64,000 nt of DNA from Octopus sinensis (GCF_006345805.1 NC_043024.1:9238001-9302000), one strand, 5' to 3'; shown: positions 9,640 to 64,000, counted from the stretch's first letter. Notes: generated from the sequence alone by a model not told the origin. Translations and numbers: made by a program.

Positions 9640-9688
<49 letters not shown>

Positions 9689-12951: not shown

Positions 12952-13335
12952 TGTGGAGGCGCAATGGCCCAGTGGTTAGGGCAGCGGACTCGCGGTCGTG
13001 GGATCGCGGTTTTGATTCCCAGACTGGGCGTTGTGAGTGTTTATTGAGCGAAAACACCTAAAGCTCCACGAGGCTCCGGCAGGGATGGTGGTGATCCCTG
13101 CTGTACTCTTTCACCACAACTTTCTCTCACTCTTACTTCCTGTTTCTGTTGTACCTGTATTTCAAAGGGCCGACCTTGTCACTCTCTGTGTCACGCTGAA
13201 TATCCCCGAGAACTACGTTAAGGGTACACGTGTCTGTGGAGTGCTCAGCCACTTACACGTTAATTTCACGAGCAGGCTGTTCCGTTGATTCGGATCAACC
13301 GGAACCCTCATCGTCGTAGCCAACGGAGTGCTTCC
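12952..13335 (+). mobile_element. Full-length family A SINE with 11-bp TSD
   Basis: ATGGTCAGAAA at 12941-12951 and 13336-13346; A and B boxes intact. Confidence 0.9.
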
Positions 13336-18794: not shown

Positions 18795-18988
18795 TCTTTT
18801 ACTTGTGTCAGTCATTTGACTGTGACCATGCTGGAGCACCGCCTTTAGTTGAGCAAATCGACCCCAGGACTTATTCTTTGTAAGCCTAGTACTTATTTTA
18901 TCGGTCTCTTTTTTGCCGAACCGCTAAGTGACGGGGACGTAAACACACCACCATCGGTTGTCAAGCAATGCTAGGGGGACAAGCACAG

Positions 18989-19071
<83 letters not shown>

Positions 19072-19245
19072 CATACATATATACGACGGGCTTTTTTCAG
19101 TTTCCGTCTACCAAATCCACTCACAAGGCTTTGATCGGCCCGAGGCTGTAGCAGAAGACACTTGCCCAAGATGCCACACAGTGGGACTGAACCCGGAACC
19201 ATGTGGTTGGTAAGCAAGCTACTTACCACACAGCCACTCCTGTGC
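18795..19245 (-). mobile_element. Family C SINE, full length
   Basis: Reverse complement of 7833-8185 family; head ends CACAGCCACTCCTG. Confidence 0.85.
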
Positions 19246-23242: not shown

Positions 23243-23655
23243 TCATCATCATCATCATCATTTAGCGTCCGTTTTCCATGCTAGCATGGGTTGGACGGTT
23301 TAACTGGGGTCTGGGAAGCCGGAAGGCTTCATCAGGCCCAGTCAGATTTGGCAGTGTTTCTACGGCTGGATGCCCTTCCTAACGCCAACCACTCCGTGAG
23401 TGTAGTGGGTGCTTTTTACGTGCCACCTGCACAGGTGCCAGACAGAGCTGGCAAACGGCCATGAACGGATGGTGTTTTTTTCGTGGCACGGGGGCCAGGC
23501 GAGGCTGGCAACGGACACAAATGGATGGTGCTTTTACGTGCTACCGGCACGGGGGCCAGGCGAGGCTGGCAACGGACATGAGCGGAAGGTGCTTTTACGT
23601 GCCAACGGCACAGGGGCCAGGCGAGGCTGGCAACGGACACGAACGGATGGTGCAT
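23243..23655 (-). mobile_element. Family D repeat with internal ~58-bp tandem units
   Basis: (ATC)n tail; GGGGCCAGGCGAGGCTGGCAACGGACA repeated three times. Confidence 0.8.
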
Positions 23656-25979: not shown

Positions 25980-27653
25980 CAGGGGTTGGACAAAATAATG
26001 GAAACACCTGGCATCATAATTTTCAAATAGCTATAAAACCATCAAAAGCTTGTTTATTTTTCTGCTTTTTGATTTATTAATAGACTAATAGTGTTGCTTA
26101 TTATGTTTTGCTAAAATTGCTGTTTCTTTTCAGATGTCATCAGAAAAAGGTAATTAAAATTCATTAAAAGGACAGATCTATCGGACTTTCAAAGAGGTCA
26201 AATTGTTGGTGCCTGTATGGCAGGTGCTAGCGTAATGAAAACAACTGAAATGTTTGGTGTATCAAGAAGTACCGTCTCGAAGGTAATGACAGCCTTTCAG
26301 AAAGAGGGAAAAATCTCCTCGTCGAAACAAAACTCTGGAAGAAGACCGAAACTTTCAGATAGGAACCATTGAACTCTTACGCGAATTGTTAGAAAGGATC
26401 GCCTTGACTGGCTTCCGTGTCAGTGGCACATAAAAAGCACCATCCGAATCGTGGCCGATGCCAGTGCCGCTTCGACTGGCTTCCGTGCAGGTGGCATGTA
26501 AAATGCACCATCCGAATCGTGGCCGAGGCCAGTGCCGCTTCGACTGGCTTCCGTGCAGGTGGCATGTAAAATGCACCAATCCAACCATGGCCGATGCCAG
26601 CCTCGCCTGGCACCAGTGCAGGTGGCACGTAAAAAGCACCCACTACACTCACGGAGTGGTTGGCGTTAGGAAGGGCATCCAGCTGTAGAAACATTGCCAG
26701 ATAAGACCGGAGCCTGGTGCAGCCTCCTGGCTTCTCAGACCCGGTCGAACCGTCCAATCCATGCTAGCATGGAGAACGAACATTAAACGATGATGATGAT
26801 CATCATCATCACAAAAGTACAGCTCCCAAAATTACAGCAGAGCTTAATGACCACCTCGAGAACCTAGTTTCCATAAAAACTGTTCACCAGGAGCTGTACA
26901 AAGGTGGATTTTATGGGAGGGCTGCAATCAGAGAACCACTACTTTCAAAGACAAATGTTTTTGGTCCTAAGAGCAGTGGAAGAATATTATTTTCTCGGAT
27001 GAGTCATCCCTTACCTTATTTTCGACCATTGGTTGAGTATACATGAGGAGACAGTCAAAAGGAGCATTTGACCCAGACTGTCTTCTTCCAATTGTTAAAC
27101 ATGAAGGAGGATCTCTGATGATCTTGTGGTGATCAGGGTGGTTTATATCTCAGAAATCTGCCGACCCAATGGTTTCCCTTCATGGCAGAATTAATAGTCA
27201 AGACTATTTATACATTTAATCTGATCAAATTCATCCTATGGTTGCGGAACTGTTTCTGGAGGGAAATGTAATCTTTCAGGATGATAACGCACCAATTCAC
27301 ACAGCTAAATTTGTCACTGAATGGCATGAAGAACATTCTAGTCAAGTTGAACATCTTACCTGGCTACCACAGTCCCCAGATCTCAATATCACTGAACATT
27401 TATTATTGAACGTTTATGGTGCATTTTAGAAAAGCAAGTAAGGAGTTGATATCCTCCATCATCATCACTACAGGAACTGGAGACTGTTTTAGCTGAAGAA
27501 TGGACAAAAATTCCTTTGGAAACAATTCAAACTTTGTACAAGTCCATACCTCATAGAATTCAAGCTGTAACTACTGCCAAAGGTGGCTCTATTCCATATT
27601 CAAATAAATTGATTGAAATTTTAAGGGGTTTCCATTATTTTGTCCAACCCCTG
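25980..27653 (+). mobile_element. Tc1-like DNA transposon (DD36E spacing), decayed, with a family D insertion at 26401-26810
   Basis: Perfect 26-bp TIRs CAGGGGTTGGACAAAATAATGGAAAC (25980-26005 and 27628-27653), TA on the right, TG on the left. Confidence 0.92.
26169..27600 (+). pseudogene. Tc1 transposase pseudogene
   Basis: DLSDFQRGQIVG...SGRRPKL (paired-like HTH and GRPR-like motif), FSDES at ~26992, QDDNAPIH...SPDLNITE; stops, frameshifts and an insertion. Confidence 0.88.
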
Positions 27654-38449: not shown

Positions 38450-38983
38450 AGCTGCTGCACAAATGTCGTAGCTAACATGGTTGGCTACAAGCCAAAAAAA
38501 AACAACAAAAAACGGTAGTAGAGGAGGAATTACAACCGTGTGTTTGTGGTCTGCTACCACAATAGCTCCTTTATAGCATGCTTTTCAACCTTTTGGCTGG
38601 AGCGGAACCCAGACTTTTGATGAGAATGGCGATTGACGTCTATATCTAGCATGTTTTGACTGTCCACTTTTCGTGTGCAGTCTTAATTGGTAATATAAAT
38701 ATTTTAATCTTCGGATTCTTTTTTAATATGCTAGACCACTGGTTCTAATTGATAAATATCAATTTGTTACCCTAAATTTAATTTTATATTATATATATAT
38801 ATATATATAATATATATTATTATCGCCCGATACTAATATGGGCATTCTATAAAAAATAAGAAAAAAGCTGACCGCTTATTAGCTCCATGAGGCCATCGCC
38901 TTAAGTTAGCTATTTGATACACAAACTGTATCCATATAACCTTTGAACAAGGGAGGTCAGTCGCTCCACACTACTGGCCGGCA

Positions 38984-39025
38984 GCTACAGACGCGTTTCG
39001 GGGTATTGCCCCTTTTCAATGCAGC
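38984..39025 (-). ncRNA. Type I hammerhead ribozyme, U3-A8 variant (copy 1)
   Basis: Minus: gctgca-TTGAAAA-gggg(caata)cccc-GAAA-cgcg-TC-tgtagc; stem I 6 bp, stem II 4 bp, palindromic ACGCGT stem III, GUC cleavage triplet. Confidence 0.85.
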
Positions 39026-39347
39026 GTAGCCAAACCAGTAGGTGTCGCTTCCGACAATCTCTGTTCAAAGGTTTTATTTACCTAGATTCGGTGGAATACA
39101 TCCACTTGTTTTCAATAATAGAAAATTATTAAATTACTAAGTCTCTCTAAAAGAGAACAACGGCAGCGTTCCCGGAAAATATTATTTATCGCCATACTAA
39201 TATGGCATTCTTATAAAAATAAGAAAAAAGCTGGCCGCTTATTAGCTCCATGAGGCCATCGCCTTAAGTTAGCTATTTGATACACAAACTGTATCCATAT
39301 AACCTTTGAACAAGGGAGGTCAGTCGCTCCACACTACTTGGCCGGCA

Positions 39348-39389
39348 GCTACAGACGCGTTTCGGGGTATTGCCCCTTTTCAATGCAGC
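39348..39389 (-). ncRNA. Type I hammerhead ribozyme, U3-A8 variant (copy 2)
   Basis: Identical to 38984-39025; predicted cleavage between 39354 and 39353. Confidence 0.85.
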
Positions 39390-39656
39390 GTAGCCAAACC
39401 AGTAGGTGTCGCTTCCTAAATCTTTATTATGATTATAAAAATCTTACAGAGATAGTACATTACAATACAAAACATAATTACAAAAAGTTTACGTTGTTCG
39501 TTTGATATTTACATATGTTGATTATTGATTATGATACTAGACTTTACTTTTCTCCTTTTTTTTTTTTTTAAATTAAAAATGATTTTGGCCAGCTAGGTAT
39601 ATCACAGTCAGGATTCTTACCCGACAGCCTAAGAGCCCAGAGACTATTTTCTCCCT

Positions 39657-42600
39657 TCATGATGACCAAGCAGGGTTACTCACACCCACCTTTTTTATCA
39701 CATCCTTCCATCGATTCACATACTTTTTCTGTGTCAGGTTCCTCTTCTCTAAATCCATCTTGCTCTTTAGATGGTATCTGAAGTATTTTAACATACCATA
39801 TCCAGAGACAAAGGATCCTGACACCAAACCTTCCAATCTAGTTCTCCACACACACTCTTTCAGTACTGCCACCGTACAGTGAAAACAAGCCTCACCTTCC
39901 TTTGAGAGTCCAGCTGGCGGTATCATCTTTATTATAGAACCAGCCGATAGCTGTACTCGTCCCAGATGCGACAACACGTGTTCTACGTAACTTATTAAGC
40001 CTGACAGCTCCTGACAATGTACAAAAGCGTGCTGGACGGTTTCATCGTCCAACCCACATCTTGGACATGTCGGTGGCACTGACATTCCATGCCTATATAA
40101 CTTATCGCGAACAGGTAGAGCATTCCTATAGCACTGCCAAGTCAGGGATTTTTGGTAATTGTCCAAATACCCCGGCTTGAAAGTCTTCTTAAACAGGTCG
40201 GATAGTTGATCCTCATCGAACCCCAGAGACCCTCTTAGGACGTCGTCATTTTTTGCCTCTACCATCCTTCTATAAAATGTCGAGGTGGTATTCCCGCAGC
40301 CGGCTTTGCCTATCTTGTGGATCAGCCAGAGTGCCTGTCGGCACTCTTTCTGCCATAAAGTCAGTTCCGTCTTTTAATGAAACCGGGTTTAAATCTCTCC
40401 ATAGAGTCCGGTTGCGGGAAGAAATTATCTGCCAGCGGACTCCACACCTTATCACCTTCCAGGTGAAACCAGAGATGTCTCAGTCTCAGCGCATGCCTGC
40501 GCATCATTAACCAAGGCATCCCCAGCCCACCTTTAGTGGTTCCTGGCAACACACGGAGCGCCTTACAAGTGGCTTTCCTCCCTTCCACAAAAAGCGGAAA
40601 AGGAGTCGATCCAACTTGCTTAGCCACAAATCGGGGCAAGGCACGACAGTCAGGCGATAGGTGATTACAGATGCTATAAACACCTGTACCACCTCCGCCC
40701 TCCCTTTCAAGGAAAGATGCCTTCCGGACCACTCCCAAACTATGGCTTCTACCTTGGTCACTACCTCGCTCCAATTTTTCTCCGTCTGGGAGTCTGAACC
40801 AAACCAAACTCCAAGCAATTTAACAGGACCATCTGTCCAGTGTCCAACAACACTGGACGATATCGGCTTGTTCCTCCAGGTGCCGAGGCGCAAACCAGTG
40901 GACTTGTCCTTGTTAACTTTTGCCCCAGCCACCGCTTCGTATCTTCGGAGAGCACCTTCTACACGAGTTAGTTGTGCTTCGTTGGACACGATGAAGGTGA
41001 CGTCATCCGCATACGCAGAAACAGACTTACCGCATCCGATTTCATTAGGATTGCATCTCACCGTCTCCAACTTCCGCAGCAATGGCTCAAGAGCCAAAAC
41101 GTACAGGAGAGGGGACAAGGGACATCCTTGACGAACTGAACGCTTAATCGAAAACGGTTCCGTTAAGTAACCGTTTATCTGGACTGTGGACTTGATACCG
41201 CTGTACATAGCTGATATCCACCCGCGAAAGTCAGGACCTAGCCCAGCCGCTTCGAGAACCGTCGCCAGGTACTGATGATCTACCCTATCAAATGCTTTAC
41301 TTTGGTCTAAATGGACCAATGCCCCTCCTTTGCCGGCTAATTGCCCAACCCTGTCTATAGTGTAGCGTAGAAGGTGAAGATTATCTTCGATCGACCTGCC
41401 TGGGATTGCACATGTCTGTGCCTTTCCGACAAGTTTTTCCATGACGACCTTCAACCTTTCTGCTAACACCTTGGCCAAAATCTTTAACTCTACATTAAGT
41501 AGAGTTATGGGCCTATAATTACTAATATTATCCCCCTTGCTCGGGTCTTTCTGGATCAGCGTCACAACTCCCCGGCTCACAGAACTGGGAATCCTCCCAT
41601 TCTGTTGCCAGTTTGCGTAGACGCTTGCCAGTATGTCCCCGAACAAGTCCGGCATACAACAATAAAACTCATAGGGCAGACCATCCAGTCCCGGCGACTT
41701 TTCCCGGGCGCATTCAGCCAAAACCCCTCTTACCTCCGCGGGAGTAATCGGTCCTTCACAGCGTTCCGCTCTGCTTGGCGAGAGCCGAGGCCCACCAGCT
41801 AGGAAGTTCTGTAAGTCCTCCCCTCGCTCGAGTGGATCGCCCTCCCCAAACAACCGAGCGAAATGCTGTTGAAAGACCTTCTGTATCTCCTCCTGTCCAT
41901 AGATTTTGCGTCCCTGTTCGTCAGTTAAAGACTTAATAGAGGACTTTTTGCCCTTCTGACTCTCCACACGACGTGCCCATCCGGCAACATTAATACCTTC
42001 TCGTTTCACTGCACGTAGCTTAGCTCTGACTCTACATCCTTCATGCTTGGCATTGAGGTGACGGTACAAGATCGTTCTCTCTGCTAACACTCTAGATGCA
42101 CAGCCAGATCCCATTGCCTCGTCTAAGTTCTTAACTAAATCGCCCTCTATTCTAGTCCTATCTAAACTTAGCTGGTTGCTAAATCTAATGGACTCCAAAC
42201 GGATGGCTCTTTTGAGGGCGATCCACCATCTATTATTAATGATGGTTCCACATAATGCCCTCTGGACTAATTCCATAATCCGGTTACGGAAAGCTTCACA
42301 AGCCAAAATAGACTTGTTCATTTTCCAGTATCCGGGTCCCTGTCTATGGCATTTATCTACATGTACCTCACACGTCACTAATTTGTGATCCGTGTAAGGC
42401 ACAATACAAAATTGTGGACAGCTAATGCTATTCCTATCTCGTTCTTTAACAAATACCCTATCTATATACGATCTGCGTGAGCCGTCATTGTTACTCCACG
42501 TCCACTGTGGAATGCTCGGCTCATCCATTCGAAACCGATCTACTAGATTAAAGCTCGTCAGTAGACCCTTAAGGCAAGGATTCCCCCTTCTATCAGACGA

Positions 42601-43053
42601 GCCCACACTATCTATCCGCGCATCGATGATAGTGTTGAAATCCCCTACCAATACTACCGTTTTAGACGTCACTAGAAAGTGCTCCAAGTTCCGATAAAAA
42701 CCAGTCTGCCTACCCTCATTAGGAGCATAAACAGCTACCAACCTGAAGGACTGCTTACTTACGTGAGTTACATCGAGGACAACCAGCCTACCTTCTGAGT
42801 CCATAAAGACAGTACTTACCTGTAAGTCCAAGTTCTTCCTGATAAGGACTGCCACGCCTGCACTTCCTCCTCGGCTAGGAGAAATAAATTTCTCGTAACC
42901 ATTGAGAAGATGCGAGAACGCTTGGGTTCCTCTCATCTTGGACTCGGTGACAATGGCTACATCTATTCTGTGTGTCCTGAGGTCGTCCAGCAAGCAAGCC
43001 TGTTTCCATTTCGACCCCATTCCACGCACATTTATACAGCCCAACTTAATCAT
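39657..43053 (-). CDS. ORF2: APE endonuclease + reverse transcriptase + C-terminal zinc finger (~1132 aa after correcting two 1-bp deletions near 40530 and 40365)
   Basis: INVRG, VTE, VYAP, GDFN, YIDR, TDH (APE); GLDG, YRPITLLN, DQSKAFDRV, VRQGCPLSP, YADD (RT); CPRC...ETVQHAFVHC; pieces 43053-40507, 40807-40361, 40265-39657 join in register. Confidence 0.92.
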
Positions 43054-43077
43054 CGATGAATGAAGAAAGTTTGTTAC

Positions 43078-44555
43078 TTACGGTTGTGAGAGGGAGCATG
43101 GCAGCTTTTGTCTGCCTGCCTCCCCCACACTCTCCGTTGTTGCTGGGCATTTAACCGGCGTTGCCACCGGGCTCTGGGATGGAGTGGCTGCCGGGCTAAT
43201 ATTCAATTTTCCAGCTATCACCTCTTGTGTGACATCTTTAATCAGGTTGTCCCTCACGTGTAGTTGGAAGAGTCTCTCCTTCCATTCCTCCTCTCCGACC
43301 TTCGCATACCTCCAATCCGGGTTTTTTTCCGATGATCTGAAACATTTTATGTTTGGTTTCGCCTTTATGTACCAAACTACTCTCTCGTTTTTTGTGTTAT
43401 AAGCAATGCACCTATCGGTTTTTTTGAATCCTTTTAAAGTTGGGGGCTGGGGTTTAATGAAATGCTGGCCTACAAAAGTAGTGCCAGCGGGGTGGGATTG
43501 GATAATTTTTTTGTGTTGTTCTTCTGCGTTTGTTTTTCTTTTTGTTTGGGGTGGGGAGTCCGGGGTATTGGATTTCTTCCTTTTGTTGGTTACAGTCGTA
43601 TATTCCATTACTTCCAGTTTTCCATTTGATAAAATATTTTCCACCTCGTTTTCGTTTTCGCTTTGTTTTCCATTCATTTTCTTTTCCTCCTTTTGACTTT
43701 CATTTTGCTTTTTCCGGGTATTCTCTTTTGTTGTTGCTGTGATGTCTGCTTTGTTCTCCACAGCGGTTTGAATGGGGGCATTAACGGGTTTTTTTCTTTT
43801 TGCACTCTGAGCGGACGTGACCCTTCTGCCCACATTTGAAACATCTGGGCCTACGTCCCTCAACCGATACCCGCGCAGTGTGTCCATCCCCCACGAAGAC
43901 CCTGTCTGGCAAACTCTCCAGCGTTGCATTGTCAGCTTGAACGATCATTTCAAGCTGCTGACCTTTCCAAAATTTTGCCTCTTTCATCCTCATGTTTAAA
44001 ATGTTTAATTTCTCTTCTACGTCGAATACGACCGCTGTTGCTGCCCACATTACATCGTAACCTGTTGGTATATCCTCTATTGTTATCTTAGCTGTTCTGC
44101 GCCCTAAGTACGTGGGCAGCAACAGGATGTCTGCACTCTTCAACGTTTGAGTTGAAATTTCCTTCGCTATGCTAGCCGACTCGAAATGCGCTTCAATAGT
44201 AGCGCTTCTCACTCCTCGGCCAACATAGCGAACCTTGTTCCAAATTGGTGCCATGCACCGTTCTACCAATTCATTTCTTACATCTGCAATCTTTTTTCCT
44301 TAATATTATATACCTTATAAATTACCGTCTTCTCACGGATTGCTTGTAAGGTGTCAGGGGGCGGTATTATTCTCGTTTCTTCTCCATCCTTTGTATGAAC
44401 TTTCTGAACTTGAAGAGATCCTCCATTGTTACTTCCAGTTCTATAACATTGCCTCCAACGGCTTCCGAAAAACTTTGTTTCTCCTTTGTATCCTTTTGCT
44501 TTATAACTTCTCCCATCTCGGGAAAATCAGAATTTGACGTTAAGTCAAGATCCAT
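43078..44555 (-). CDS. ORF1: nucleic-acid-binding protein with CCHC zinc knuckle (~492 aa after correcting three 1-bp indels near 44377, 44295, 43790)
   Basis: ATG at 44555; CFKCGQKGHVRSEC; track ORFs 44367-44606, 43781-44269, 43078-43929 chain via A-run indels; stop is 24 nt before the ORF2 ATG. Confidence 0.75.
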
Positions 44556-45074
44556 AATAAAATGCAAGTGACTTGTCACAAGAGACAAGATAAAAATCAA
44601 ATCCACACTGAATTAAAGTTCATATATAAAAAGAAATTTTCTACCCCGAAGGGCGAAAATTACTTTGTTTCACAAGTTAATACTCCAAAAATTATACGTG
44701 TAAATCCAGAACAGAACGAACTAACATAACAGCTTACAGCGTAAAATAATCCGACGTAATCCAAGGAAAAATCAGTAGGTGTCGCTTCCGACAATCTCTG
44801 TTCAAAGGTTTTATTTACCTAGCTTCGGTGGAATACATCCACTTGTTTTCAATAATAGAAATATTAAAATTACTAAGTCTCTCTAAAAGAGAACAACGGC
44901 AGCGTTCCCGGAAAATATTATTTATCGCCATACTAATATGGCATTCTTATAAAAATAAGAAAAAAGCTGACCGCTTATTAGCTCCATGAGGCCATCGCCT
45001 TAAGTTAGCTATTTGATACACAAACTGTATCCATATAACCTTTGAACAAGGGAGGTCAGTCGCTCCACACATGC

Positions 45075-47744: not shown

Positions 47745-49298
47745 CATATACTCTTTTACTCTTTTTTACTTGTTTCAAGTCATTTTGACTGCGGCCATGC
47801 TGGAGCACCGCCTTTTAGTCGAGCAAATCGACCCCGGAACTTATTCTTTTTGTAAGCCCAGCACTTATTCTATCGGTCTCTTTTGCCGAACCACTAGGTG
47901 ACGGGGGACGTAAACACACCAGCATCGGTTGTCAAGTGATGCTAGGGGGACAAACACAGACACACAAACACAGACACACACACATACACACGCACACACA
48001 CACACACACACACATACACGCATATATATACATATATACGACGTGCTTCTTTCAGTTTCCGTCTACCAAATCCACCCAGAAGGCTTTGGTCGGCTCGAGG
48101 CTATAGCAGAAGACACTTGCCCAAGGTGCCACGCAGTGGGACTGAACCCGGAACCATGTGGTTGGTAAACAAGCTACTTACCACACAGCCACTCCGACAT
48201 GTATATATATATATACATATATACGACAGGCTTCTTTTAGTTTCCGTCTACCAAATCCACCCAGAAGGCTTTGGTCGGCCCGAGGCTATAGAAGAAGACA
48301 CTTGCCCAAGGTGCCATGCAGTGGGACTGAACCCGGAACCATGTGGTTGGTAAACAAGCTACTTACCACACAGCCACTCCGACATGTATATATATATATA
48401 CATATATACGACAGGCTTCTTTTAGTTTCCGTCTACCAAATCCACCCAGAAGGCTTTGGTCGGCCCGAGGCTATAGAAGAAGACACTTGCCCAAGGTGCC
48501 ATGCAGTGGGACTGAACCCGGAACCATGTGGTTGGTAAACAAGCTACTTACCACACAGCCACTCCGACATGTATATATATATATACATATATACGACAGG
48601 CTTCTTTTAGTTTCCGTCTACAAATCCACCAGAAGGCTTTGGTCGGCCGAGGCTATAGCAGGAGACACTTGCCCAAGGTGCCACGCAGTGGGACTGAACC
48701 GGAACCATGTGGTTGGTAAACAAGCTACTTACCACACAGCCACTCCGACATGTATATATATATATACATATATACGACAGGCTTCTTTTGTTTCCGTCTA
48801 CCAAATCCACCCAGAAGGCTTTGGTCGGCCCGAGGCTATAGCAGGAGACACTTGCCCAAGGTGCCACGCAGTGGGACTGAACCCGGAACCATGTGGTTGG
48901 TAAACAAGCTACTTACCACACAGCCACTCCGACATTATATATATATACATATATACGACAGGCTTCTTTTAGTTTCCGTCTACCAAATCCACCCAGAAGG
49001 CTTTGGTCGGCCTGAGGCTATAGAAGAAGACACTTGCCCAAGGTGCCACGCAGTGGGACTGAACCGGAACCATGTGGTTGGTAAACAAGCTACTTACCAC
49101 ACAGCCACTCCGACATGTATATATATATATACATATATACGACAGGCTTCTTTTAGTTCCGTCTACCAAATCCACCCAGAAGGCTTTGGTCGGCCCGAGG
49201 CTATAGAAGAAGACACTTGCCCAAGGTGCCACGCAGTGGGACTGAACCCGGAACCATGCGGTTGGTAAGCAGGCTACTCACCACACAGCCACTCCTGT
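47745..49298 (-). mobile_element. Family C SINE whose ~185-bp 5' head is repeated seven times in tandem
   Basis: TATACGAC unit starts near 48035, 48220, 48405, 48590, 48771, 48953, 49137; each unit contains the A and B boxes on the minus strand. Confidence 0.9.
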
Positions 49299-49403
49299 GC
49301 ATGTGTATAAATATACATATTTATGCAAATTCACATAGATGTCACAAACAAATTCTGTGAAGTTTTGTAAATTCAGTTCTACACTATTTAACAGATGAAA
49401 CGC

Positions 49404-55051: not shown

Positions 55052-55600
55052 TAGGTGTTGTTCTATGGGCACCATTTGTGTCTTTCATGAGGTATTTTTC
55101 CTTTTAAATGCTCTTTTTCAATTCCTGAAACCTTTATTTTTTGGAGGAGGGAGTAGTGCAATCGATTTGGTTAATTTCCGCCCTGTGTCCATTTCAGAAT
55201 CGGTGCCCTCTAGCGGACTACAGCCACAGCCCAAATCATAATGGCAGTCACACGGTTCCTTGCATTGAGCTTTGACTTCAGGAGAAGTTTAAGGCGCTTC
55301 AAATATGCAGCGGTGACCCTGTCCTTCATTTCTCCGTGCAAGCTCCAAGATCCCAAGGTATTTGTACCCATCATCATCATCATCCGGGTCTCCCATTAGC
55401 TCTCCGTTTCCCAGTCCTATGCCCCTACAATCTGCTCTTTTTCCCTCTTCAAAATAAACAACACTGCACACTGCGAGATACCGAATTCCCTCCCTATATC
55501 CCTGCTGCAAATCTGTACAGATCAATCTGCATCTCCATATCAGGCCATATCAGGCTCTGTTTTTGTGAACAGTTTTAAAATCATCCATGAAGAGTAGGTG
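55052..55600 (-). pseudogene. R4/Dong-like reverse transcriptase fragment continuing out of the satellite
   Basis: Across frameshifts: HLLFMDD.KLFTKTEPDM..VQICSRDIGREFGISQCAV...GYKYLGILEL...AYLKRLKLLLKSKLNARN. Confidence 0.8.
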
Positions 55601-58600
55601 GTTGTGACGTGGTCCATGCACAAGTGTTTTGGTACCGTTTGCACTTCTTCATTACGACCTTATCTATCACAGGGTAGTCCTTGGTGTCCTTGGATCGTTT
55701 TGGGCATCTCTTTTGTTCTACTAGTTGATTGTTTTCTGCAAAAAAACGTATATATTTTTCCTACAGTCTCAACCTGCCTCTCCATATCAGGCCATATCAG
55801 ACTCTGTTTTTGAGAACATTTTAAAATCATCCATGAAGAGTAGGTGGTTGTGACGTGGTCCATGCACAAGTGTTTTGGTACCGTTTGCACTTCTTCATTA
55901 CGACCTTATCTATCACAGGGTAGTCCTTGGTGTCCTCGGATCGTTTTGGGCATCTCTTTTGTTCTACTAGTTGATTGTTTTCTGCAAAAAAACGTATATA
56001 TTTTTCCTACAGTCTCAATCTGCCTCTCCATATCAGGCCATATCAGGCTCTGTTTTTGAGAACATTTTTAAATCATCCATGAAGAGTAGGTGGTTGTGAC
56101 GTGGTCCATGCACAAGTGTTTTGGTACCGTTTGCACTTCTTCATTACGACTTTATCTATCACAGGGTAGTCCTTGGTGTCCTCGGATCGTTTTGGGCATC
56201 GCTTTTGTTCTACTAGAAGTAGATTGTTTTCTGCAAAAAAACGTATATATTTTTCCTACAGTCTCAATCTATCTCTCCATATCAGGCCATATCAGGCTCT
56301 GTTTTTGTGAACATTTTAAAATCATCCATGAAAAGAAGGTGGTTGTGACGTGGTCCATGCACAAGTGTTTTGGTACCGTTTGCATTTCTTCATTACGACC
56401 TTATCTATCACAGGGTAGTCCTTGGTGTCCTCGGATCGTTTTGGGCATCTCTTTTGTTCTACTAGTTGATTGTTTTCTGCAAAAAAACGTATATATTTTT
56501 CCTACAGTCTCAATCTGCCTCTCCATATCAGGCCATATCAGGCTCTGTTTTTGTGAACAGTTTTAAATCATCCATGAAAAGAAGGTGGTTGTGACGTGGT
56601 CCATGCACAAGTATTTTGGTACCGTTTGCACTTCTTCATTACGACCTTATCTATCACAGGGTAGACCTTGGTGTCCTCGGATCGTTTTAGGCATCTCTTT
56701 TGTTCTATTTGTTGATTGTTTTCTGCAAAAAAACGTATATATTTTCCTACAGTCTCAATCTGCCTCTCCATATCAGGCCATATCAGGCTCTGTTTTTGTG
56801 AACATTTTTAAAATCATCCATGAAAAGAAGGTGGTTGTGACGTGGTCCATGCACAAGTGTTTTGGTACCGTTTGCATATCTTCATTACGACCTTAGCTAT
56901 CACATGGTAGTCCTTGGTGCCCTTAGATCGTTTTGGGCATCTCTTTTGTTCTACTAGTTGATTGTTTTCTGCAAAAAAAACGTATATATTTTTCCTACAG
57001 TCTCAATCTGCCTCTCCATATCAGGCCATATCAGGCTCTGTTTTTGTGAACAGTTTTAAATCATCCATGAAAAGAAGGTGGTTGTGACGTGGTCCATGCA
57101 CAAGTGTTTTGGTACCGTTTGCATTTCTTCATTACGACCTTATCTATCACAGGGTAGTCCTTGGTGCCCTTGGATCGTTTTGGGCATCTCTTTTGTTCTA
57201 CTAGTTGATTGTTTTCTGCAAAAAAACGTATATATTTTTCCTACAGTCTCAATCTGCCTCTCCATATCAGGCCATATCAGGCTCTGTTTTTGTGAACATT
57301 TTTAAATCATCCATGAAAAGAAGGTGGTTGTGACGTGGTCCATGCACAAGTGTTTTGGTACCGTTTGCATTTCTTCATTACGACCTTATCTATCACAGGG
57401 TAGTCCTTGGTGCCCTTGGATCGTTTTGGGCATCTCTTTTGTTCTACTAGTTGATTGTTTTCTGCAAAAAAACGTATATATTTTTCCTAGTCTCAATCTG
57501 CCTCTCCATATCAGGCCATATCAGGCTCTGTTTTTGTGAACATTTTTAAATCATCCATGAAAAGAAGGTGGTTGTGACGTGGTCAATGCACAAGTGTTTT
57601 GGTACCGTTTGCATTTCTTCATTACGACCTTATCTATCACAGGGTAGTCCTTGGTGCCCTTGGATCGTTTTGGGCATCACTTTTGTTCTACTAGTTGATT
57701 GTTTTCTGCAAAAAAACGTATATATTTTTCCTACAGTCTCAATCTGCCTCTCCATATCAGGCCATATCAGGCTCTGTTTTTGTGAACATTTTTAAATCAT
57801 CCATGAAAAGAAGGTGGTTGTGACGTGGTCCATGCACAGTATTTTGGTACCGTTTGCATTTCTTCATTACGACCTTATCTATCACATGGTAGCCCTTGGT
57901 ATCCTCGGATCGTTTTTGGCATATCTTTTGTTCTACTAGTTGATTGTTTTCTGCAAAAAAACGTATATATTTTTCCTACAGTCTCAACATGCCTCTCCAT
58001 ATCAGGCCATATCAGGCTCTGTTTTTGTGAACATTTTTAAATCATCCATGAAAAGAAGGTGGTTGTGACGTGGTCCATGAACAAGTGTTTTGGTACCGTT
58101 TGCATTTCTTCATTACGACCTTATCTATTACAGGATAGTCCTTGGTGTCCTCGGATCGTTTTGGGCATCTCTTTTGTGCTACTAGTTGATTGTTTTCTGC
58201 AAAAAAACGTATATATTTTTCCTACAGTCTCAATCTGCCTCTCCATATCAGGCCATATCAGGCTCTGTTTTTGTGAACAGTTTTAAATCATCCATGAAAA
58301 GAAGGTGGTTGTGACGTGGTCCATGCACAAGTGTTTTGGTACCGTTTGCATTTCTTCATTACGACCTTATCTATCACAGGGTATTCCTTGGTGTCCTCGG
58401 ATCGTTTTGGGCATCTCTTTTGTTCTACTAGTTGATTGTTTTCTGCAAAAAACGTATATATTTTCCCTACAGTCTCAACCTGCCTCTCCATATCAGGCCA
58501 CATCAGACTCTGCTTTTGTGAACATTTTTAAATCATCCATGAAAAGAAGGTGGTTGTGACGTGGTCCATGCACAAGTATTTTGGTACCGTTTGCACTTTT

Positions 58601-61600
58601 TCATTACGACCTTATCTATCACAGGGTAGTCCTTGGTGCCCTTGGATCGTTTTGGGCATCTCTTTTGTTCTACTAGTTGATTGTTTTCTGCAAAAAAACG
58701 TATATATTTTTCCTACAGTCTCAATCTGCCTCTCCATATCAGGCCATATCAGGCCCTGTTTTTGTGAACATTTTTAAATCATCCATGAAAAGAAGGTGGT
58801 TGTGACGTGGTCCATGCACAAGTATATTGGTACCGTTTGCACTTCTTCTTTACGACTTTAACTATCACAGGGTAGTCCTTGGTGTCCTCGGATCGTTTTG
58901 GGCATCTCTTTTGTTCTACTAGTTGATTGTTTTCTGCAAAAAAACGTATATATTTTTCCTACAGTCCCAATCTGCCTCTCCATATCAGGCCATATCAGAC
59001 TCTGTTTTTGAGAACAGTTTTAAATCATCCATGAAAAGAAGGTGGTTGTGACGTAGTCCATGCACAAGTATTTTGGTACCGTTTGCACTTCTTCATTACG
59101 ACTTTATCTATCACAGGGTAGTCCTTGGTGTCCTCGGATCGTTTTGGGCATCTCTTTTGTTCTACTAGTTGATTGTTTTCTGCAAAAAAACGTATATATT
59201 TTTCCTACAGTCTCAATCTGCCTCTCCATATCAGGCCGTATCAGGCTCTGTTTTTGAGAACATTTTTAAATCATCCATGAAAAGAAGGTGGTTGTGACGT
59301 GGTCCATGCACAAGTATTTTGGTACCGTTTGCATTTCTTCATTACGACTTTATCTATCACAGGGTAGTCCTTGGTGTCCTCGGATCGTTTTGGGCATCTC
59401 TTTTGTTCTACTAGTTGATTGTTTTCTGCAAAAAAACGTATATATTTTTCCTACAGTCTCAATCTGCCTCTCCATATCAGGCCGTATCAGACTCTGTTTT
59501 TGAGAACATTTTTAAATCATCCATGAAAAGAAGGTGGTTGTGACGTGGTCCATGCACAAGTATTTTGGTACCGTTTGCACTTCTTCATTACGACTTTATC
59601 TATCACAGGGTAGTCCTTGGTGTCCTCGGATCGTTTTGGGCATCTCTTTTGTTCTACTAGTTGATTGTTTTCTGCAAAAAAACGCATATATTTTTCCTAC
59701 AGTCTCAATCTGCCTCTCCATATCAGGCCGTATCAGGCTCTGTTTTTGAGAACATTTTTAAATCATCCATGAAAAGAAGGTGGTTGTGACGTGGTCCATG
59801 CACAAGTGTTTTGGTACCGTTTGCATTTCTTCATTACGACCTTATCTATCACAGGGTAGCCCTTGGTGTCCTCGGATCGTTTTGGGCATATCTTTTGATC
59901 TACTAGTTGATTGTTTTCTGCAAAAAAACGTATATATTTTTCCTACAGTCTCAATCTGCCTCTCCATATCAGGCCATATCAGGCTCTGTTTTTGTGAACA
60001 TTTTTAAATCATCCATGAAAAGAAGGTGGTTGTGACGTGGTCCATGCACAAGTGTTTTGGTACCGTTTGCATTTCTTCATTACGACCTTATCTATCACAG
60101 GGTAGCCCTAGGTGTCCTCGGATCGTTTTGGGCATATCTTTTGTTCTACTAGTTGATTGTTTTCTGCAAAAAAACGTATATATTTTTCCTACAGTCTCAA
60201 TCTGTCTCTCCATATCAGGCCATATCAGGCTCTGTTTTTGTGAACATTTTTAAATCATCCATGAAAAGAAGGTGGTTGTGACGTGGTCCATGCACAAGTG
60301 TTTTGGTACCGTTTGCACTTCTTCATTACGACCTTATCTATCACAGGGTAGCCCTTGGTGCCCTTCGATCGTTTTGGGCATCTCTTTTGTTCTACTAGTT
60401 GATTGTTTTCTGCAAAAAAACGTATATATTTTTCCTACAGTCTCAATCTGCCTCTCCATATCAGGCCATATCAGGCTCTGTTTTTGTGAACATTTTTAAA
60501 TCATCCATGAAAAGAAGGTGGTTGTGACGTGGTCCATGCACAAGTGTTTTGGTACCGCTTGCATTTCTTCATTACGACCTTATCTATCACAGGGTAGCCC
60601 TTGGTGTCCTCGGATCGTTTTGGGCATATCTTTTGTTCTACTAGTTGATTGTTTTCTGCAAAAAAACGTATATATTTTTCCTACAGTCTCAACATGCCTC
60701 TCCATATCAGGCCATATCAGGCTCTGTTTTTGTGAACATTTTTAAATCATCCATGAAAAGAAGGTGGTTGTGACGTGGTCCATGAACAAGTGTTTTGGTA
60801 CCGTTTTCATTTCTTCATTACGACCTTATCTATTACAGGATAGTCCTTGGTGTCCTCGGATCGTTTTGGGCATCTCTTTTGTGCTACTAGTTGATTGTTT
60901 TCTGCAAAAAAACGTATATTTTTCCTACAGTCTCAATCTGCCTCTCCATATCAGGCCATATCAGGCTCTGTTTTTGTGAACAGTTTTAAATCATCCATGA
61001 AAAGAAGGTGGTTGTGACGTGGTCCATGCACAAGTGTTTTGGTACCGTTTGCACTTCTTCATTACGACCTTATCTATCACAGGGTAGTCCTTGGTGTCCT
61101 CGGATCGTTTTGGGCATCTCTTTTGTTCTACTAGTTGATTGTTTTCTGCAAAAAAACGTATATATTTTCCCTATAGTCTCAAACTGCCTCTCCATATCAG
61201 GCCATATCAGACTCTGTTTTTGTGAACATTTTTAAATCATCCATGAAAAGAAGGTGGTTGTGACGTGGTCCATGCACAAGTATTTTGGTACCGTTTGCAC
61301 TTCTTCATTACGACCTTATCTATCACAGGGTAGTCCTTGGTGCCCTTGGATCGTTTTGGGCATCTCTTTTGTTCTACTAGTTGATTGTTTTCTGCAAAAA
61401 AACGTATATGTTTTTCCTACAGTCTCAATCTGCCTCTCCATATCAGGCCATATCAGGCTCTGTTTTTGTGAACATTTTTAAATCATCCATGAAAAGAAGG
61501 TGGTTGTGACGTGGTCCATGCACAAGTATATTGGTACCGTTTGCACTTCTTCTTTACGACTTTAACTATCACAGGGTAGTCCTTGGTGTCCTCGGATCGT

Positions 61601-64000
61601 TTTGGGCATCTCTTTTGTTCTACTAGTTGATTGTTTTCTGCAAAAAAACGTATATATTTTTCCTACAGTCCCAATCTGCCTCTCCATATCAGGCCATATC
61701 AGACTCTGTTTTTGAGAACAGTTTTAAATCATCCATGAAAAGAAGGTGGTTGTGACGTAGTCCATGCACAAGTATTTTGGTACCGTTTGCACTTCTTCAT
61801 TACGACTTTATCTATCACAGGGTAGTCCTTGGTGTCCTCGGATCGTTTTGGGCATCTCTTTTGTTCTACTAGTTGATTGTTTTCTCTGCAAAAAAACGTA
61901 TATATTTTTCCTACAGTCTCAATCTGCCTCTCCATATCAGGCCGTATCAGGCTCTGTTTTTGAGAACATTTTTAAAATCATCCATGAAAAGAAGGTGGTT
62001 GTGACGTGGTCCATGCACAAGTTTTTGGTACCGTTTGCACTTCTTCATTACGACCTTATCTATCACAGGGTAGTCCTTGGTGTCCTCGGATCGTTTTGGG
62101 CATCTCTTTTGTTCTACTAGTTGATTGTTTTCTGCAAAAAAACGTATATATTTTTCCTACAGTCTCAATCTGCCTCTCCATATCAGGCCATATCAGGCTC
62201 TGTTTTTGAGAACATTTTAAAATCATCCATGAAGAGTAGGTGGTTGTGACGTGGTCCATGCACAAGTGTTTTGGTACCGTTTGCACTTCTTCATTACGAC
62301 TTTATCTATCACAGGGTAGTCCTTGGTGTCCTCGGATCGTTTTGGGCATCGCTTTTGTTCTACTAGAAGTAGATTGTTTTCTGCAAAAAACGTATATATT
62401 TTTCCTACAGTCTCAATCTATCTCTCCATATCAGGCCATATCAGGCTCTGTTTTTGTGAACATTTTAAAATCATCCATGAAAAGAAGGTGGTTGTGACGT
62501 GGTCCATGCACAAGTGTTTTGGTACCGTTTGCATTTCTTCATTACGACCTTATCTATCACAGGGTAGTCCTTGGTGTCCTCGGATCGTTTTGGGCATCTC
62601 TTTTGTTCTACTAGTTGATTGTTTTCTGCAAAAAAACGTATATATTTTTCCTACAGTCTCAATCTGCCTCTCCATATCAGGCCATATCAGGCTCTGTTTT
62701 TGTGAACAGTTTTAAATCATCCATGAAAAGAAGGTGGTTGTGACGTGGTCCATGCACAAGTATTTTGGTACCGTTTGCACTTCTTCATTACGACCTTATC
62801 TATCACAGGGTAGACCTTGGTGTCCTCGGATCGTTTTAGGCATCTCTTTTGTTCTATTTGTTGATTGTTTTCTGCAAAAAAACGTATATATTTTTCCTAC
62901 AGTCCCAATCTGCCTCTCCATATCAGGCCATATCAGGCTCTGTTTTTGAGAACATTTTAAAATCATCCATGAAAAGAAGGTGGTTGTGACGTGGTCCATG
63001 CACAAGTGTTTTGGTACCGTTTGCACTTCTTCATTACGACCTTATCTATCACAGGGTAGTCCTTGGTGTCCTCGGATCGTTTTGGGCATCTCTTTTGTTC
63101 TACTAGTTGATTGTTTTCTGCAAAAAAACGTATATATTTTCCCTACAGTCTCAATCTGCCTCTCCATATCAGGCCGTATCAGGCTCTGTTTTTGAGAACA
63201 GTTTTAAATCATCCATGAAAAGAAGGTGTTTGTGACGTGGTCCATGCACAAGTATTTTGGTACCGTTTGCATTTCTTCATTACGACCTTATCTATCACAG
63301 GGTAGTCCTTGGTGCCCTTGGATCGTTTTGGGCATCTCTTTTGTTCTACTAGTTGATTGTTTTCTGCAAAAAAAACGTATATATTTTTCCTACAGTCTCA
63401 ATCTGCCTCTCCATATCAGGCCATATCAGACTCTGTTTTTGTGAACAGTTTTAAATCATCCATGAAAAGAAGGTGGTTGTGACGTGGTCCATGCACAAGT
63501 GTTTTGGTACCGTTTGCATTTCTTCATTACGACCTTATCTATCACAGGGTAGTCCTTGGTGCCCTGGATCGTTTTGGGCATCTCTTTTGTTCTACTAGTT
63601 GATTGTTTTCTGCAAAAAAACGTATATATTTTTCCTACAGTCTCAATCTGCCTCTCCATATCAGGCCATATCAGGCTCTGTTTTTGTGAACATTTTTAAA
63701 TCATCCATGAAAAGAAGGTGGTTGTGACGTGGTCCATGCACAAGTGTTTTGGTACCGTTTGCATTCTTCATTACGACCTTATCTATCACAGGGTAGTCCT
63801 TGGTGCCCTTGGATCGTTTTGGGCATCTCTTTTGTTCTACTAGTTGATTGTTTTCTCTGCAAAAAAACGTATATATTTTTCCTACAGTCTCATCTGCCTC
63901 TCCATATCAGGCCATATCAGGCTCTGTTTTTGTGAACAGTTTTAAATCATCCATGAAAAGAAGGTGGTTGTGACGTGGTCCATGCACAAGTGTTTTGGTA
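55516..64000. repeat. ~246-bp satellite, about 35 copies, running off the window end, derived from a LINE RT segment
   Basis: Unit starts at 55598, 55844, 56090...63963; minus strand of each unit encodes GPRHNHLLFMDD...KTEPDM-ERQIETV; 10-bp duplication CCATATCAGG in every unit. Confidence 0.95.

What the first reader, a model, noticed from the sequence alone, without database searches (positions are those of the whole stretch)
39348..44789. Tx1-like LINE inserted next to the ribozyme in the array: possible new target specificity and borrowed RNA processing
Seen: the element sits co-oriented with the ribozyme strand, flanked by a perfect 17-bp TSD taken from the hairpin arm that lies 10-27 nt upstream of the hammerhead. 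It ends ...AATAAAGATTTA with no poly(A) tail, and the downstream hammerhead would cut a read-through transcript about 63 nt past its 3' end. Established: Tx1-group L1s are often sequence-specific for multicopy targets (other transposons, U2 snRNA, tRNA arrays, 5S rDNA, microsatellites), and R2 uses an HDV-like ribozyme to free itself from a co-transcript. Inference: this family may specifically parasitise the ribozyme repeat, and in longer arrays it would be bracketed by hammerheads that excise a unit-length RNA. I know of no described LINE that targets a hammerhead array, but one insertion cannot show specificity.
Basis: partly seen in the sequence, partly recalled or inferred. Interest (0 to 1): 0.88.

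Follow-up and report, generated by a model that had tools for sequence, protein, structure and literature searches.

The report
LINE copy nested in hammerhead repeat
A decayed L1/Tx1-type jumping gene sits cleanly inside a short array of hammerhead-ribozyme repeats (a "retrozyme") in what looks like a cephalopod genome, but no data I could reach show that it seeks out these repeats or uses their ribozyme, so for now it is an ordinary nested insertion.

Summary
A 5,356-bp non-LTR retrotransposon (window 39417-44772, minus strand) interrupts a 364-bp tandem repeat. It is flanked by a perfect 17-bp target-site duplication, and removing it restores the intact repeat junction (79/80). It encodes a CCHC ORF1 and an ORF2 with APE, RT and zf-RVT domains. 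It has no poly(A) tail, and ORF2 carries two frameshifts. The host repeat is a small (2.4-unit) metazoan "non-LTR retrozyme". Each full unit carries a type-I hammerhead with a U3-A8 core variant and a minimal palindromic helix III. Rfam misses the motif, but it fits published descriptors. The ribozyme cleavage site lies 63 nt downstream of the LINE, on the same strand.

The interpretation (a retrozyme-targeting family that borrows hammerhead processing) could not be tested. The source genome is absent from every searchable collection, and the window holds only this one copy. No hammerhead lies upstream of the LINE at this locus. The ribozyme is of the dimer-dependent kind. Relatives at 44-69% identity show no hammerhead association.

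The best reading is a single ordinary insertion into a pre-existing retrozyme. Target preference remains possible (about 0.2). It would add a new target to a clade already known for such preferences.

The parts
38814..39052 (-). Retrozyme unit A. It is the sense-3'-most unit and is partial (about 239 bp). It carries hammerhead 2 and decays into (AT)n at its sense-3' end.
   Evidence: 96% identical to unit positions 127-364; alignment.
38984..39025 (-). Hammerhead 2 (type I, U3-A8 core). The predicted cleavage is after C at 38990.
   Evidence: Descriptor hit with the core starting at 39019; 78 nt identical to hammerhead 1 (D8).
39053..39416 (-). Retrozyme unit B, a full 364-bp unit with 40.7% GC. 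Together with unit A it contains one complete cleavage-to-cleavage monomer (39353 to 38990).
   Evidence: The 364-nt RNA (folded one base out of register, 38991-39354) gives -121.7 kcal/mol, z = -6.9, with 0 of 100 shuffles as stable.
39348..39389 (-). Hammerhead 1: helix I GCUGCA/UGUAGC, core UUGAAAA, helix II GGGG/CCCC with loop CAAUA, then GAA, then helix III A-U closed by palindromic CGCG. Cleavage is GUC^U after 39354, 63 nt downstream of the LINE 3' end.
   Evidence: No Rfam hit. The architecture matches PMC4209133.
39400..39416 (-). Target-site duplication, sense-3' copy (GGAAGCGACACCUACUG in sense). In the RNA it forms part of the long arm that extends helix I.
   Evidence: pairing seen in the fold.
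39417..44772 (-). L1/Tx1-superfamily LINE, 5,356 bp, 45% GC, apparently full length, tail-less and decayed.
39417..39656 (-). LINE 3' UTR (240 nt). It contains an internal A14 run at 39558-39571 and ends AAUAAAGAUUUA with no poly(A).
39657..40373 (-). ORF2 C-terminal segment (third reading frame used), with zf-RVT at about 40008-40151.
   Evidence: Pfam PF13966, E = 3.6e-11; tblastn frame map.
40364..40534 (-). ORF2 middle segment in a second frame. It is bounded by two frameshifts, near 40530 and near 40370.
   Evidence: tblastn of P0001 and P0002 switches frame 1 to 3 to 2; frame map.
40507..43053 (-). ORF2 main segment (848 aa): APE domain at about 42436-42996 and RT domain at about 40804-41532.
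   Evidence: Pfam Exo_endo_phos 2.7e-14 and RVT_1 6.1e-33. It aligns over residues 6-838 with human LINE-1 ORF2p, E = 5e-63.
43078..43929 (-). 283-aa lysine-rich ORF between ORF1 and ORF2. It is in frame with ORF2, separated from it by one stop codon, and overlaps the end of ORF1 in another frame. It has no domain hit.
43784..44299 (-). ORF1 (about 160-170 codons) ending in one CCHC zinc knuckle (about 43796-43846).
   Evidence: Pfam zf-CCHC 1.8e-5. It is homologous to the ORF1 of relatives.
44300..44772 (-). LINE 5' UTR. No ribozyme was detected in it.
   Evidence: Rfam E-value scan shows only chance-level hits.
44773..44789 (-). Target-site duplication, sense-5' copy.
44790..45070 (-). Retrozyme unit C. 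It is the sense-5'-most unit and is 5'-truncated (282 bp). It starts about 20 nt after the cleavage position and so has no hammerhead.
   Evidence: 98% identical to unit positions 1-282; alignment.

Best explanation
This is a single, ordinary nested insertion. A short retrozyme locus was already in place: 2.4 units of a 364-bp hammerhead-bearing repeat, the known class of non-autonomous metazoan retroelements. An APE-type LINE of the L1/Tx1 superfamily then retrotransposed into it by target-primed reverse transcription. Inferred steps are as follows. The endonuclease nicked the bottom strand (window + strand) at 5'-GTCGCTTCC^GACAATC-3'. The freed 3'-OH primed cDNA synthesis from a defined 3' end of the LINE RNA (...AAUAAAGAUUUA, no A tail). 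The top strand was cut 17 bp away (5'-CCUACUG^GUUUGG-3' in sense), which gave the 17-bp duplication. The copy has since decayed, or was already defective: ORF2 has two frameshifts and the ORF1 region is split. The ribozyme 63 nt downstream and the shared orientation are incidental. The hammerhead belongs to the retrozyme's own life cycle, in which multimeric transcripts are cleaved to 364-nt monomers that circularise.
For: Shown: a perfect 17-bp TSD and a restorable empty site at 79/80. Shown: LINE domain set APE + RT + zf-RVT with a CCHC ORF1, and end-to-end similarity to human L1 ORF2p. Shown: two frameshifts in ORF2. Shown: the host repeat has all sequence-level features of a non-LTR retrozyme, namely 364 bp, 41% GC, a type-I hammerhead and a strongly self-paired monomer with z = -6.9 (PMC7229834, PMC4209133). 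Shown: there is no hammerhead upstream of the LINE. Shown: the window has only one LINE copy and one array. Shown: about 19.3 kb (33%) of the non-LINE window is tandem repeat by TRF at score >=200, so landing in some array is unremarkable here. A relative in another genome made the same 17-bp TSD in an unrelated tandem repeat of about 455-495 bp, at a Y-run/R-run nick (GGATT/AAATT), and another copy has different flanks. That points to a loose L1-like site preference rather than a long recognition sequence. No hammerhead or target-like 17-mer occurs in any of the 16 related loci.
Against: Only n = 1, so specificity is not excluded. The nick site (TTCC/GACAA) is not the A/T-rich L1 consensus, although the genome is 40% GC. 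There is no poly(A) tail. The ORF1 type (zf-CCHC, no Transposase_22) and the best named relatives (Ciona pol-like protein, Chlorella Zepp) fit the diverse L1/Tx1 part of the tree (PMC5203782), where many families do show target preference, including for transposons and satellites (PMC4494074). Relatives are repeatedly found in head-to-tail LINE arrays or inside tandem repeats, which hints that the lineage tends to land in repeats.
Confidence: 0.65

Rival explanations
1. The LINE family has a genuine target preference for this retrozyme, in the manner of Tx1-clade families. Its endonuclease, and/or annealing of a read-through 3' tail to the nicked target, would direct insertion to the GGAAGCGAC... 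site of the repeat unit.
For: The nick site is not A-rich and the 3' end is tail-less and precise. The ORF1 is Type I/Tx1-like (PMC5203782). Tx1-clade families are documented to target transposons, satellites, snRNA genes and microsatellites (PMC4494074). A donor copy sitting in the same target would give a read-through RNA whose 3' tail (GGAAGCGACACCUACUG...) is complementary to the primer strand; this is inference. Relatives are often seen in tandem repeats or tandem LINE arrays.
Against: There is a single copy and no other copy could be reached. Relatives do not share this target. The retrozyme makes up 1.5% of this window and one third of the window is tandem repeat, so a chance hit in 'some interesting repeat' is not rare. 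Tx1 clade membership is untested.
Confidence: 0.22
2. Borrowed RNA processing. The family lives in retrozyme arrays, and the arrays' hammerheads trim its co-transcripts. They would define a 3' end 63 nt past the element and, in longer arrays, a 5' end as well.
For: The LINE and ribozyme share a strand. An intact hammerhead 1 with its full 5' arm is preserved by the TSD, and a second hammerhead 364 nt further on could supply the dimer partner. AAUAAA lies only 6 nt from the element end, so polyadenylation cleavage would fall in the flank (sequence plus general knowledge). Precedent for ribozyme-processed LINE co-transcripts comes from R2 and other LINEs with HDV-like ribozymes (own knowledge; also mentioned in bioRxiv 10.64898/2026.07.22.740005).
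Against: This reading requires the target-preference rival to be true first. No hammerhead lies upstream at this locus. The ribozyme has a 1-bp helix III and a U3-A8 core; motifs with such a minimal helix III are reported as weak or inactive as monomers (PMC4209133, PMC7229834). The inserted copy carries none of the 63-nt tail, so reverse transcription starts internally and does not need a processed end. Shared orientation has a 50% chance. No expression data are available.
Confidence: 0.06
3. Reverse dependency. This LINE is the autonomous partner that mobilises the retrozyme, and the two are adjacent because they use the same insertion machinery.
For: PMC7229834 lists LINEs or PLEs as candidate mobilisers of metazoan retrozymes. 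The retrozyme locus looks like a 5'-truncated multimeric cDNA.
Against: The unit and the LINE share no sequence, including the 3' ends (BLAST). The array has no recognisable TSD and ends in (AT)n, unlike the LINE. Recent work ties animal retrozymes to the terminal repeats of Penelope-like elements (bioRxiv 10.64898/2026.07.22.740005).
Confidence: 0.04

Closest known systems
Target-preferring Tx1-clade LINEs (Tx1L in the Tx1D piggyBac transposon, Tx1-Mar in Mariner-N4_AMi, Keno in U2 snRNA genes, Kibi/Koshi in microsatellites; PMC4494074)
   Same: It is an APE-type LINE with a CCHC-type ORF1 sitting inside another multicopy element, with a clean TSD.
   Different: Recurrent use of one target defines those families. 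Here only one insertion is known. RT-phylogeny placement in Tx1 was not obtained. A hammerhead retrozyme has not been reported as a target in the papers searched.
Metazoan non-LTR retrozymes (Cervera and de la Pena 2020, PMC7229834)
   Same: The host repeat is a tandem unit of 364 bp (reported range 170-400), has low GC, carries a type-I hammerhead and gives a highly self-paired monomer RNA.
   Different: The array is tiny (2.4 units). The core carries U3-A8, and helix III is minimal. Helix III that short was described for amphibian retrozymes and for PLE hammerheads, not for most invertebrate retrozymes. Circular RNA and self-cleavage were not tested.
Hammerheads of Penelope-like elements and dimer-dependent metazoan hammerheads (PMC4209133)
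   Same: It has a 1-2-bp helix III closed by a small palindromic loop, which implies action as a dimer in tandem copies. The U3-A8 core covariation was seen in Schistosoma Cercyon PLE motifs.
   Different: No PLE (RT + GIY-YIG) is present in the window. Helix I (6 bp) and helix II (4 bp) are of the canonical type-I kind rather than the 'min-HHR' kind with long helix II.
R2 and other LINEs processed by HDV-like ribozymes
   Same: The shared idea is a self-cleaving RNA trimming a LINE co-transcript.
   Different: In those elements the ribozyme is part of the element and cuts at its 5' junction. Here the ribozyme belongs to the host repeat, lies 63 nt beyond the 3' end, and none lies upstream. 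No function is shown.
Human LINE-1 ORF2p (PDB 8uw3, 8sxt, 8c8j)
   Same: ORF2 aligns over APE, linker and RT with E = 5e-63. The TSD length is in the L1 range.
   Different: There is no poly(A) tail, the nick site is not TTTT/AA, and ORF1 has a CCHC knuckle instead of Transposase_22.

Membership tests
APE-type non-LTR retrotransposon, L1 superfamily | N-terminal apurinic-like endonuclease followed by a reverse transcriptase in ORF2 | tested here: met
   Pfam Exo_endo_phos E = 2.7e-14 and RVT_1 E = 6.1e-33. Aligns over residues 6-838 with human L1 ORF2p, E = 5e-63.
APE-type non-LTR retrotransposon, L1 superfamily | C-terminal cysteine-rich zinc-binding domain | tested here: met
   zf-RVT PF13966, E = 3.6e-11, in the third frame segment.
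APE-type non-LTR retrotransposon, L1 superfamily | Variable-length target-site duplication from staggered nicks | tested here: met
   17/17 TSD and empty site restored at 79/80.
APE-type non-LTR retrotransposon, L1 superfamily | 3' poly(A) tail (typical of L1 proper) | tested here: not met
   The element ends ...AATAAAGATTTA directly at the TSD. Relatives also end ...AAATAAA(R) without a tail.
Tx1 clade | RT-domain phylogeny groups it with Tx1L, Keno, Kibi and the like rather than with L1 proper | not testable with these tools
   No Tx1 reference sequence was returned by either protein search. The best named relatives are Ciona Q76IK4 (27%) and Chlorella Zepp (26%).
Tx1 clade | Type I ORF1 (RRM and/or CCHC knuckle, no Transposase_22) | tested here: met
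   zf-CCHC E = 1.8e-5 and no Transposase_22 hit. PMC5203782 calls this pattern consistent with Tx1, but it is not exclusive to Tx1.
Target-specific LINE | Independent copies recur at the same target sequence | not testable with these tools
   There is one copy in the window. Four collection scans gave 0 hits. No protein above 62% identity was found.
Hammerhead ribozyme, type I | Conserved core CUGANGA ... GAAA ... UH at a three-way junction | tested here: met
   The core is UUGAAAA / GAAA / GUC, that is, the documented U3-A8 covariation of the C3-G8 pair (PMC4209133).
Hammerhead ribozyme, type I | Helices I (about 6 bp) and II (about 4 bp), and a short helix III with a palindromic loop as in metazoan motifs | tested here: met
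   Helix I GCUGCA/UGUAGC, helix II GGGG/CCCC, helix III A-[CGCG]-U. Two hits against 0.02 expected.
Hammerhead ribozyme, type I | Scores with the curated covariance models | tested here: not met
   No Rfam 15 hit at gathering score or at E<=10, even on 96 nt.
Hammerhead ribozyme, type I | Self-cleavage | not testable with these tools
   This needs in vitro transcription of monomer and dimer constructs.
Metazoan non-LTR retrozyme | Tandem repeats of 170-400 bp, each with a type-I hammerhead, and GC below 50% | tested here: met
   364-bp period, 2 hammerheads, 40.7% GC.
Metazoan non-LTR retrozyme | Highly self-paired monomer RNA | tested here: met
   MFE -121.7 kcal/mol, z = -6.9.
Metazoan non-LTR retrozyme | Expressed as linear and circular monomer RNA | not testable with these tools
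   No transcript data were available.
Ribozyme-processed LINE (R2 type) | A ribozyme at or upstream of the element's 5' junction releases the element RNA | tested here: not met
   No hammerhead lies in unit C upstream of the LINE. No ribozyme was found in the 5' UTR.

The most novel reading that the evidence does not exclude
The LINE family is specialised on hammerhead retrozyme arrays. Donor copies would be transcribed through the downstream repeat, and the array's (dimeric) hammerhead would cut 63 nt past the element. The resulting target-derived 3' tail would anneal to the nicked GGAAGCGAC... site of another retrozyme unit to prime precise reverse transcription. This would be the first LINE shown to exploit a ribozyme supplied by its target.
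Probability: 0.06. Interest if true: 0.8.

Novelty: new member of a known kind. Interest (0 to 1): 0.3.

Why it matters
As it stands, this is one more nested transposon insertion, and its main use is annotation. It documents a cephalopod-like L1/Tx1 LINE and a retrozyme whose U3-A8, minimal-helix-III hammerhead escapes Rfam. If the family did prove to home to retrozyme units, it would add a ribozyme-bearing non-autonomous retroelement to the list of Tx1-type targets. It would also give a tractable case for asking how an APE endonuclease or a read-through RNA tail selects a target. If the hammerhead also shaped the LINE RNA, that would be a new way for a LINE to obtain defined transcript ends. 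Both questions can be settled with a simple genome-wide flank tabulation in the source species.

Tried and rejected
(1) Rfam gave no hammerhead or other ribozyme. I ran it on the whole window at gathering score, on 851 nt and 96 nt around the motif at E<=10, and on the LINE 5' UTR. The motif was therefore assessed with my own descriptor and against the literature.

(2) I tried to find other copies with exact-pattern scans. The LINE's last 27 nt was scanned in metagenome contigs. The ribozyme core was scanned in prokaryote genome contigs, and a version with a degenerate loop in metagenome and viral contigs. All gave 0 hits. These collections are unlikely to hold cephalopod DNA, so this says nothing about copy number.

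(3) Protein homology was searched with ORF2, with its C-terminal piece and with a 15-sequence profile. The best hit is 62% identical, and neither the same family nor any Tx1 reference was returned. Eleven contig look-ups followed. The closest relatives (L001, L005-L012; about 69-71% nt identity for L001 and L005-L010) end before, or ambiguously at, the 3' junction.

(4) I tested whether relatives sit next to hammerheads or the 17-mer target. They do not.

(5) I looked for shared sequence between the LINE and the retrozyme unit (a SINE/LINE-type 3' tail relationship) and found none.

(6) A 31-nt match between the LINE 3' UTR and L002 is an A-run with short flanks. I judged it low-complexity.

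(7) An assembly artefact or chimera is rejected, because the TSD and the restorable empty site are those of a real insertion.

(8) A composite 'LINE with retrozyme pseudo-LTRs' analogous to a PLE is rejected, because the flanking units are one interrupted unit plus a TSD.

Full report
WHAT IS THERE

The window is repeat-rich, 40% GC and without recognisable host genes. Ten further ORFs gave no Pfam hit, and about 19.3 kb is in tandem arrays. Its SINE-like repeats, and the fact that the only named animal relative closer than 30% is from Argonauta hians, suggest a cephalopod. That origin is an inference.

On the minus strand lies a 5,356-bp element at 39417-44772. The same 17 bases bound it on both sides: + strand CAGTAGGTGTCGCTTCC at 39400-39416 and at 44773-44789. 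Joining the outer flanks gives a sequence 79/80 identical to the uninterrupted junction of the neighbouring repeat unit at 39052|39053. The 17 bases are therefore a true target-site duplication and not a by-product of the tandem array.

THE ELEMENT

Read in sense, the parts are:
- a 5' UTR of about 470 nt;
- an ORF1 of about 160-170 codons ending in one CCHC zinc knuckle (Pfam 1.8e-5);
- a 283-aa lysine-rich ORF with no domain hit, which overlaps the end of ORF1 in another frame and is in frame with ORF2, separated from it by a single stop;
- ORF2, with an apurinic-type endonuclease (2.7e-14), a reverse transcriptase (6.1e-33) and a C-terminal zf-RVT domain (3.6e-11).

Mapping relatives onto the DNA shows ORF2 switching frame twice, near 40530 and near 40370. 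This copy is therefore dead, unless those are assembly errors. ORF2 aligns end to end with human LINE-1 ORF2p (E = 5e-63).

The 240-nt 3' UTR ends ...AAUAAAGAUUUA with no A tail. Relatives in another genome also end at ...AAATAAA(R) without a tail.

The element is thus an APE-type LINE of the L1 superfamily. The ORF1 type (CCHC, no Transposase_22) and the best named relatives (a Ciona pol-like protein and Chlorella Zepp) match what PMC5203782 describes as the diverse L1/Tx1 groups. No Tx1 reference sequence could be obtained, so 'Tx1-like' remains plausible but untested.

THE HOST REPEAT

The host is a 364-bp unit present as 2.4 copies, and it is the only such array in the window. In sense order:
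- unit C (44790-45070) is 5'-truncated;
- the LINE follows;
- unit B (39053-39416) is complete;
- unit A (38814-39052) is partial and runs out into (AT)n.

Units B and A each begin with a hammerhead-like motif: helix I GCUGCA/UGUAGC, core UUGAAAA, helix II GGGG/CCCC with loop CAAUA, then GAA, then A-CGCG-U, with cleavage GUC^U.

Rfam does not detect the motif at any threshold tried, and two features explain this. The core has U3 and A8 in place of the C3-G8 pair, and helix III is a single pair closed by a palindromic tetraloop. PMC4209133 describes both. It says canonical metazoan type-I hammerheads have a 6-bp helix I, a 4-bp helix II and a 1-2-bp helix III with a 2-4-nt palindromic loop, and that they act as dimers in tandem copies. 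It also reports the U3-A8 covariation in about 1,300 Schistosoma motifs.

A descriptor encoding these rules finds only the two array sites in the 64 kb, against 0.02 expected. The 364-nt cleavage-to-cleavage RNA folds far better than shuffles (-121.7 kcal/mol, z = -6.9). Unit length, GC content (40.7%) and architecture match the metazoan non-LTR retrozymes of PMC7229834. I therefore accept the 'ribozyme array' as a small retrozyme locus. Catalysis and circular RNA remain untested.

GEOMETRY

The duplicated 17-mer lies 10-27 nt upstream of helix I, and in the predicted fold it is part of the long arm that extends helix I. C17 of hammerhead 1 (39354) is 63 nt beyond the LINE's last base, and both are on the minus strand. 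Because the 17-mer is duplicated, hammerhead 1 keeps its full 5' arm.

The LINE is not bracketed, however. Unit C begins about 20 nt after the cleavage position and has no hammerhead.

TESTING THE INTERPRETATION

The claim that the family targets this repeat needs other copies, and I could not reach any:
- The window has one copy.
- Exact-pattern scans of the metagenome, prokaryote-genome and viral collections found nothing, as expected if no cephalopod DNA is there.
- The closest proteins in the large collection are 62% identical (P0001) or, for the C-terminal piece, 51-58%. Their short contigs (L001, L005-L012) stop before or ambiguously at the 3' junction.

More distant relatives could be examined. 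A family 44% identical in ENA assembly ERZ21867824 occurs in three settings:
- as head-to-tail LINE arrays (L002/L003 with a 6,821-bp period at 99.9%; also L015);
- once inside an unrelated tandem repeat of about 455-495 bp, with a 17-bp TSD AATCCTTCATTTGTTGA (L013/L014, probably one event seen twice);
- once with other flanks (L004).

Two relatives in Argonauta hians lie head to tail and share a near-identical segment at the 3' end. None of these loci contains a hammerhead or anything like the 17-mer.

The lineage is therefore often seen in repeats, which fits a Tx1-like habit. The sampled family is not tied to one target, and the two nick sites I could read (TTCC/GACAA here, GATT/AAATT in L014) share only a pyrimidine-run/purine-run character.

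WEIGHING

Several points favour chance. One third of the window is tandem repeat. Shared orientation is a coin flip. There is a single event.

Other points favour preference. The nick site is not A-rich, the 3' end is tail-less and precise, and the ORF1 is Tx1-type. PMC4494074 shows that many Tx1 families prefer particular transposons, satellites, small-RNA genes or microsatellites.

I put an ordinary insertion at about 0.65 and a real preference for the retrozyme at about 0.2.

The 'borrowed processing' idea needs the preference to be real and is further weakened by four observations. There is no upstream ribozyme here. The hammerhead is of a type reported to be weak or inactive except as a dimer (PMC4209133, PMC7229834). 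The inserted copy carries none of the 63-nt tail, so reverse transcription begins at a fixed internal position regardless of downstream sequence. No ribozyme belonging to the LINE itself was found.

It is not excluded. A read-through RNA would contain both downstream hammerheads, and a target-derived tail could anneal to the primer strand. I give it about 0.06.

The converse idea, that this LINE mobilises the retrozyme, has no sequence support. It also runs against recent evidence linking animal retrozymes to Penelope-like elements (bioRxiv 10.64898/2026.07.22.740005).

COMPARISON AND NOVELTY

Both partners belong to known kinds: L1/Tx1 LINEs and metazoan retrozymes. Even if confirmed, it would extend a well-known Tx1-type behaviour to a new target. 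Only ribozyme co-option would be new in kind.

On present evidence the finding is a correctly observed, ordinary nested insertion with an untested hypothesis attached. A genome-wide tabulation of flanks in the source species would settle it quickly.

Noticed in passing
window 39348-39389 and 38984-39025 (minus strand): The retrozyme hammerhead carries the U3-A8 core covariation and a 1-bp helix III with a palindromic CGCG loop. Rfam 15 misses it completely, even at E<=10 on 96 nt. Cephalopod-type retrozymes may therefore be under-annotated by covariance-model scans.
   Followed up: partly
window 38814-39416 and 44790-45070: The retrozyme locus is only 2.4 units long. Its sense-5' end starts about 20 nt after the ribozyme cleavage position, its sense-3' end fades into an (AT)n microsatellite, and I saw no TSD for the array itself.
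   Followed up: partly
window 43078-43929 (minus strand): A 283-aa lysine-rich ORF with no domain hit lies between the CCHC ORF1 and ORF2. It is in frame with ORF2, separated from it by a single stop codon, and overlaps the end of ORF1 in another frame. It could be a frameshifted ORF1 tail or an extra ORF.
   Followed up: partly
L002/L003 (ERZ21867824 ctg88761c) and L015: LINE relatives (44% aa identity) form head-to-tail tandem arrays. The period is 6,821 bp at 99.9% identity, and the 3' end ...GGAAATAAAAT abuts the next copy's 5' UTR directly.
   Followed up: partly
L013 and L014, about 2123-2588 and 9181-10587: A relative LINE is embedded in a tandem repeat of about 455-495 bp that contains (CT)n. 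It has a 17-bp TSD AATCCTTCATTTGTTGA, the same TSD length as in the window. The two loci are 97% identical across the flanks and may be haplotigs or a segmental duplication.
   Followed up: partly
L016 (Argonauta hians BAAFZT010000021.1) 12729-12965 and 18799-19074: Two adjacent LINE relatives are only 67-70% identical in ORF2. They nevertheless share the last 60 bp or so of the 3' UTR, a (TCTA)n run and then 180 bp at 99% identity. This could be a shared 3' module or a shared target, and it is unresolved.
   Followed up: partly
window 55522-64000: A 246-bp satellite, 34.5 copies at 96% identity, runs off the end of the window.
   Followed up: no
window 48022-49320; also 6432-6881, 23408-23653 and 26406-26640: There are tandem and dispersed copies of SINE-like units, including a 185/365-bp array. 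I recognise them from memory as cephalopod-type SINEs, but this was not verified against a repeat library.
   Followed up: no
window 39558-39571 (minus strand; LINE 3' UTR): An internal A14 run lies about 85-100 nt after the ORF2 stop and 140 nt before the element's end. A similar TTTA-A13-GGAAAAAGT motif occurs in the inter-ORF region of L002 (9342-9371). This is probably low complexity.
   Followed up: partly
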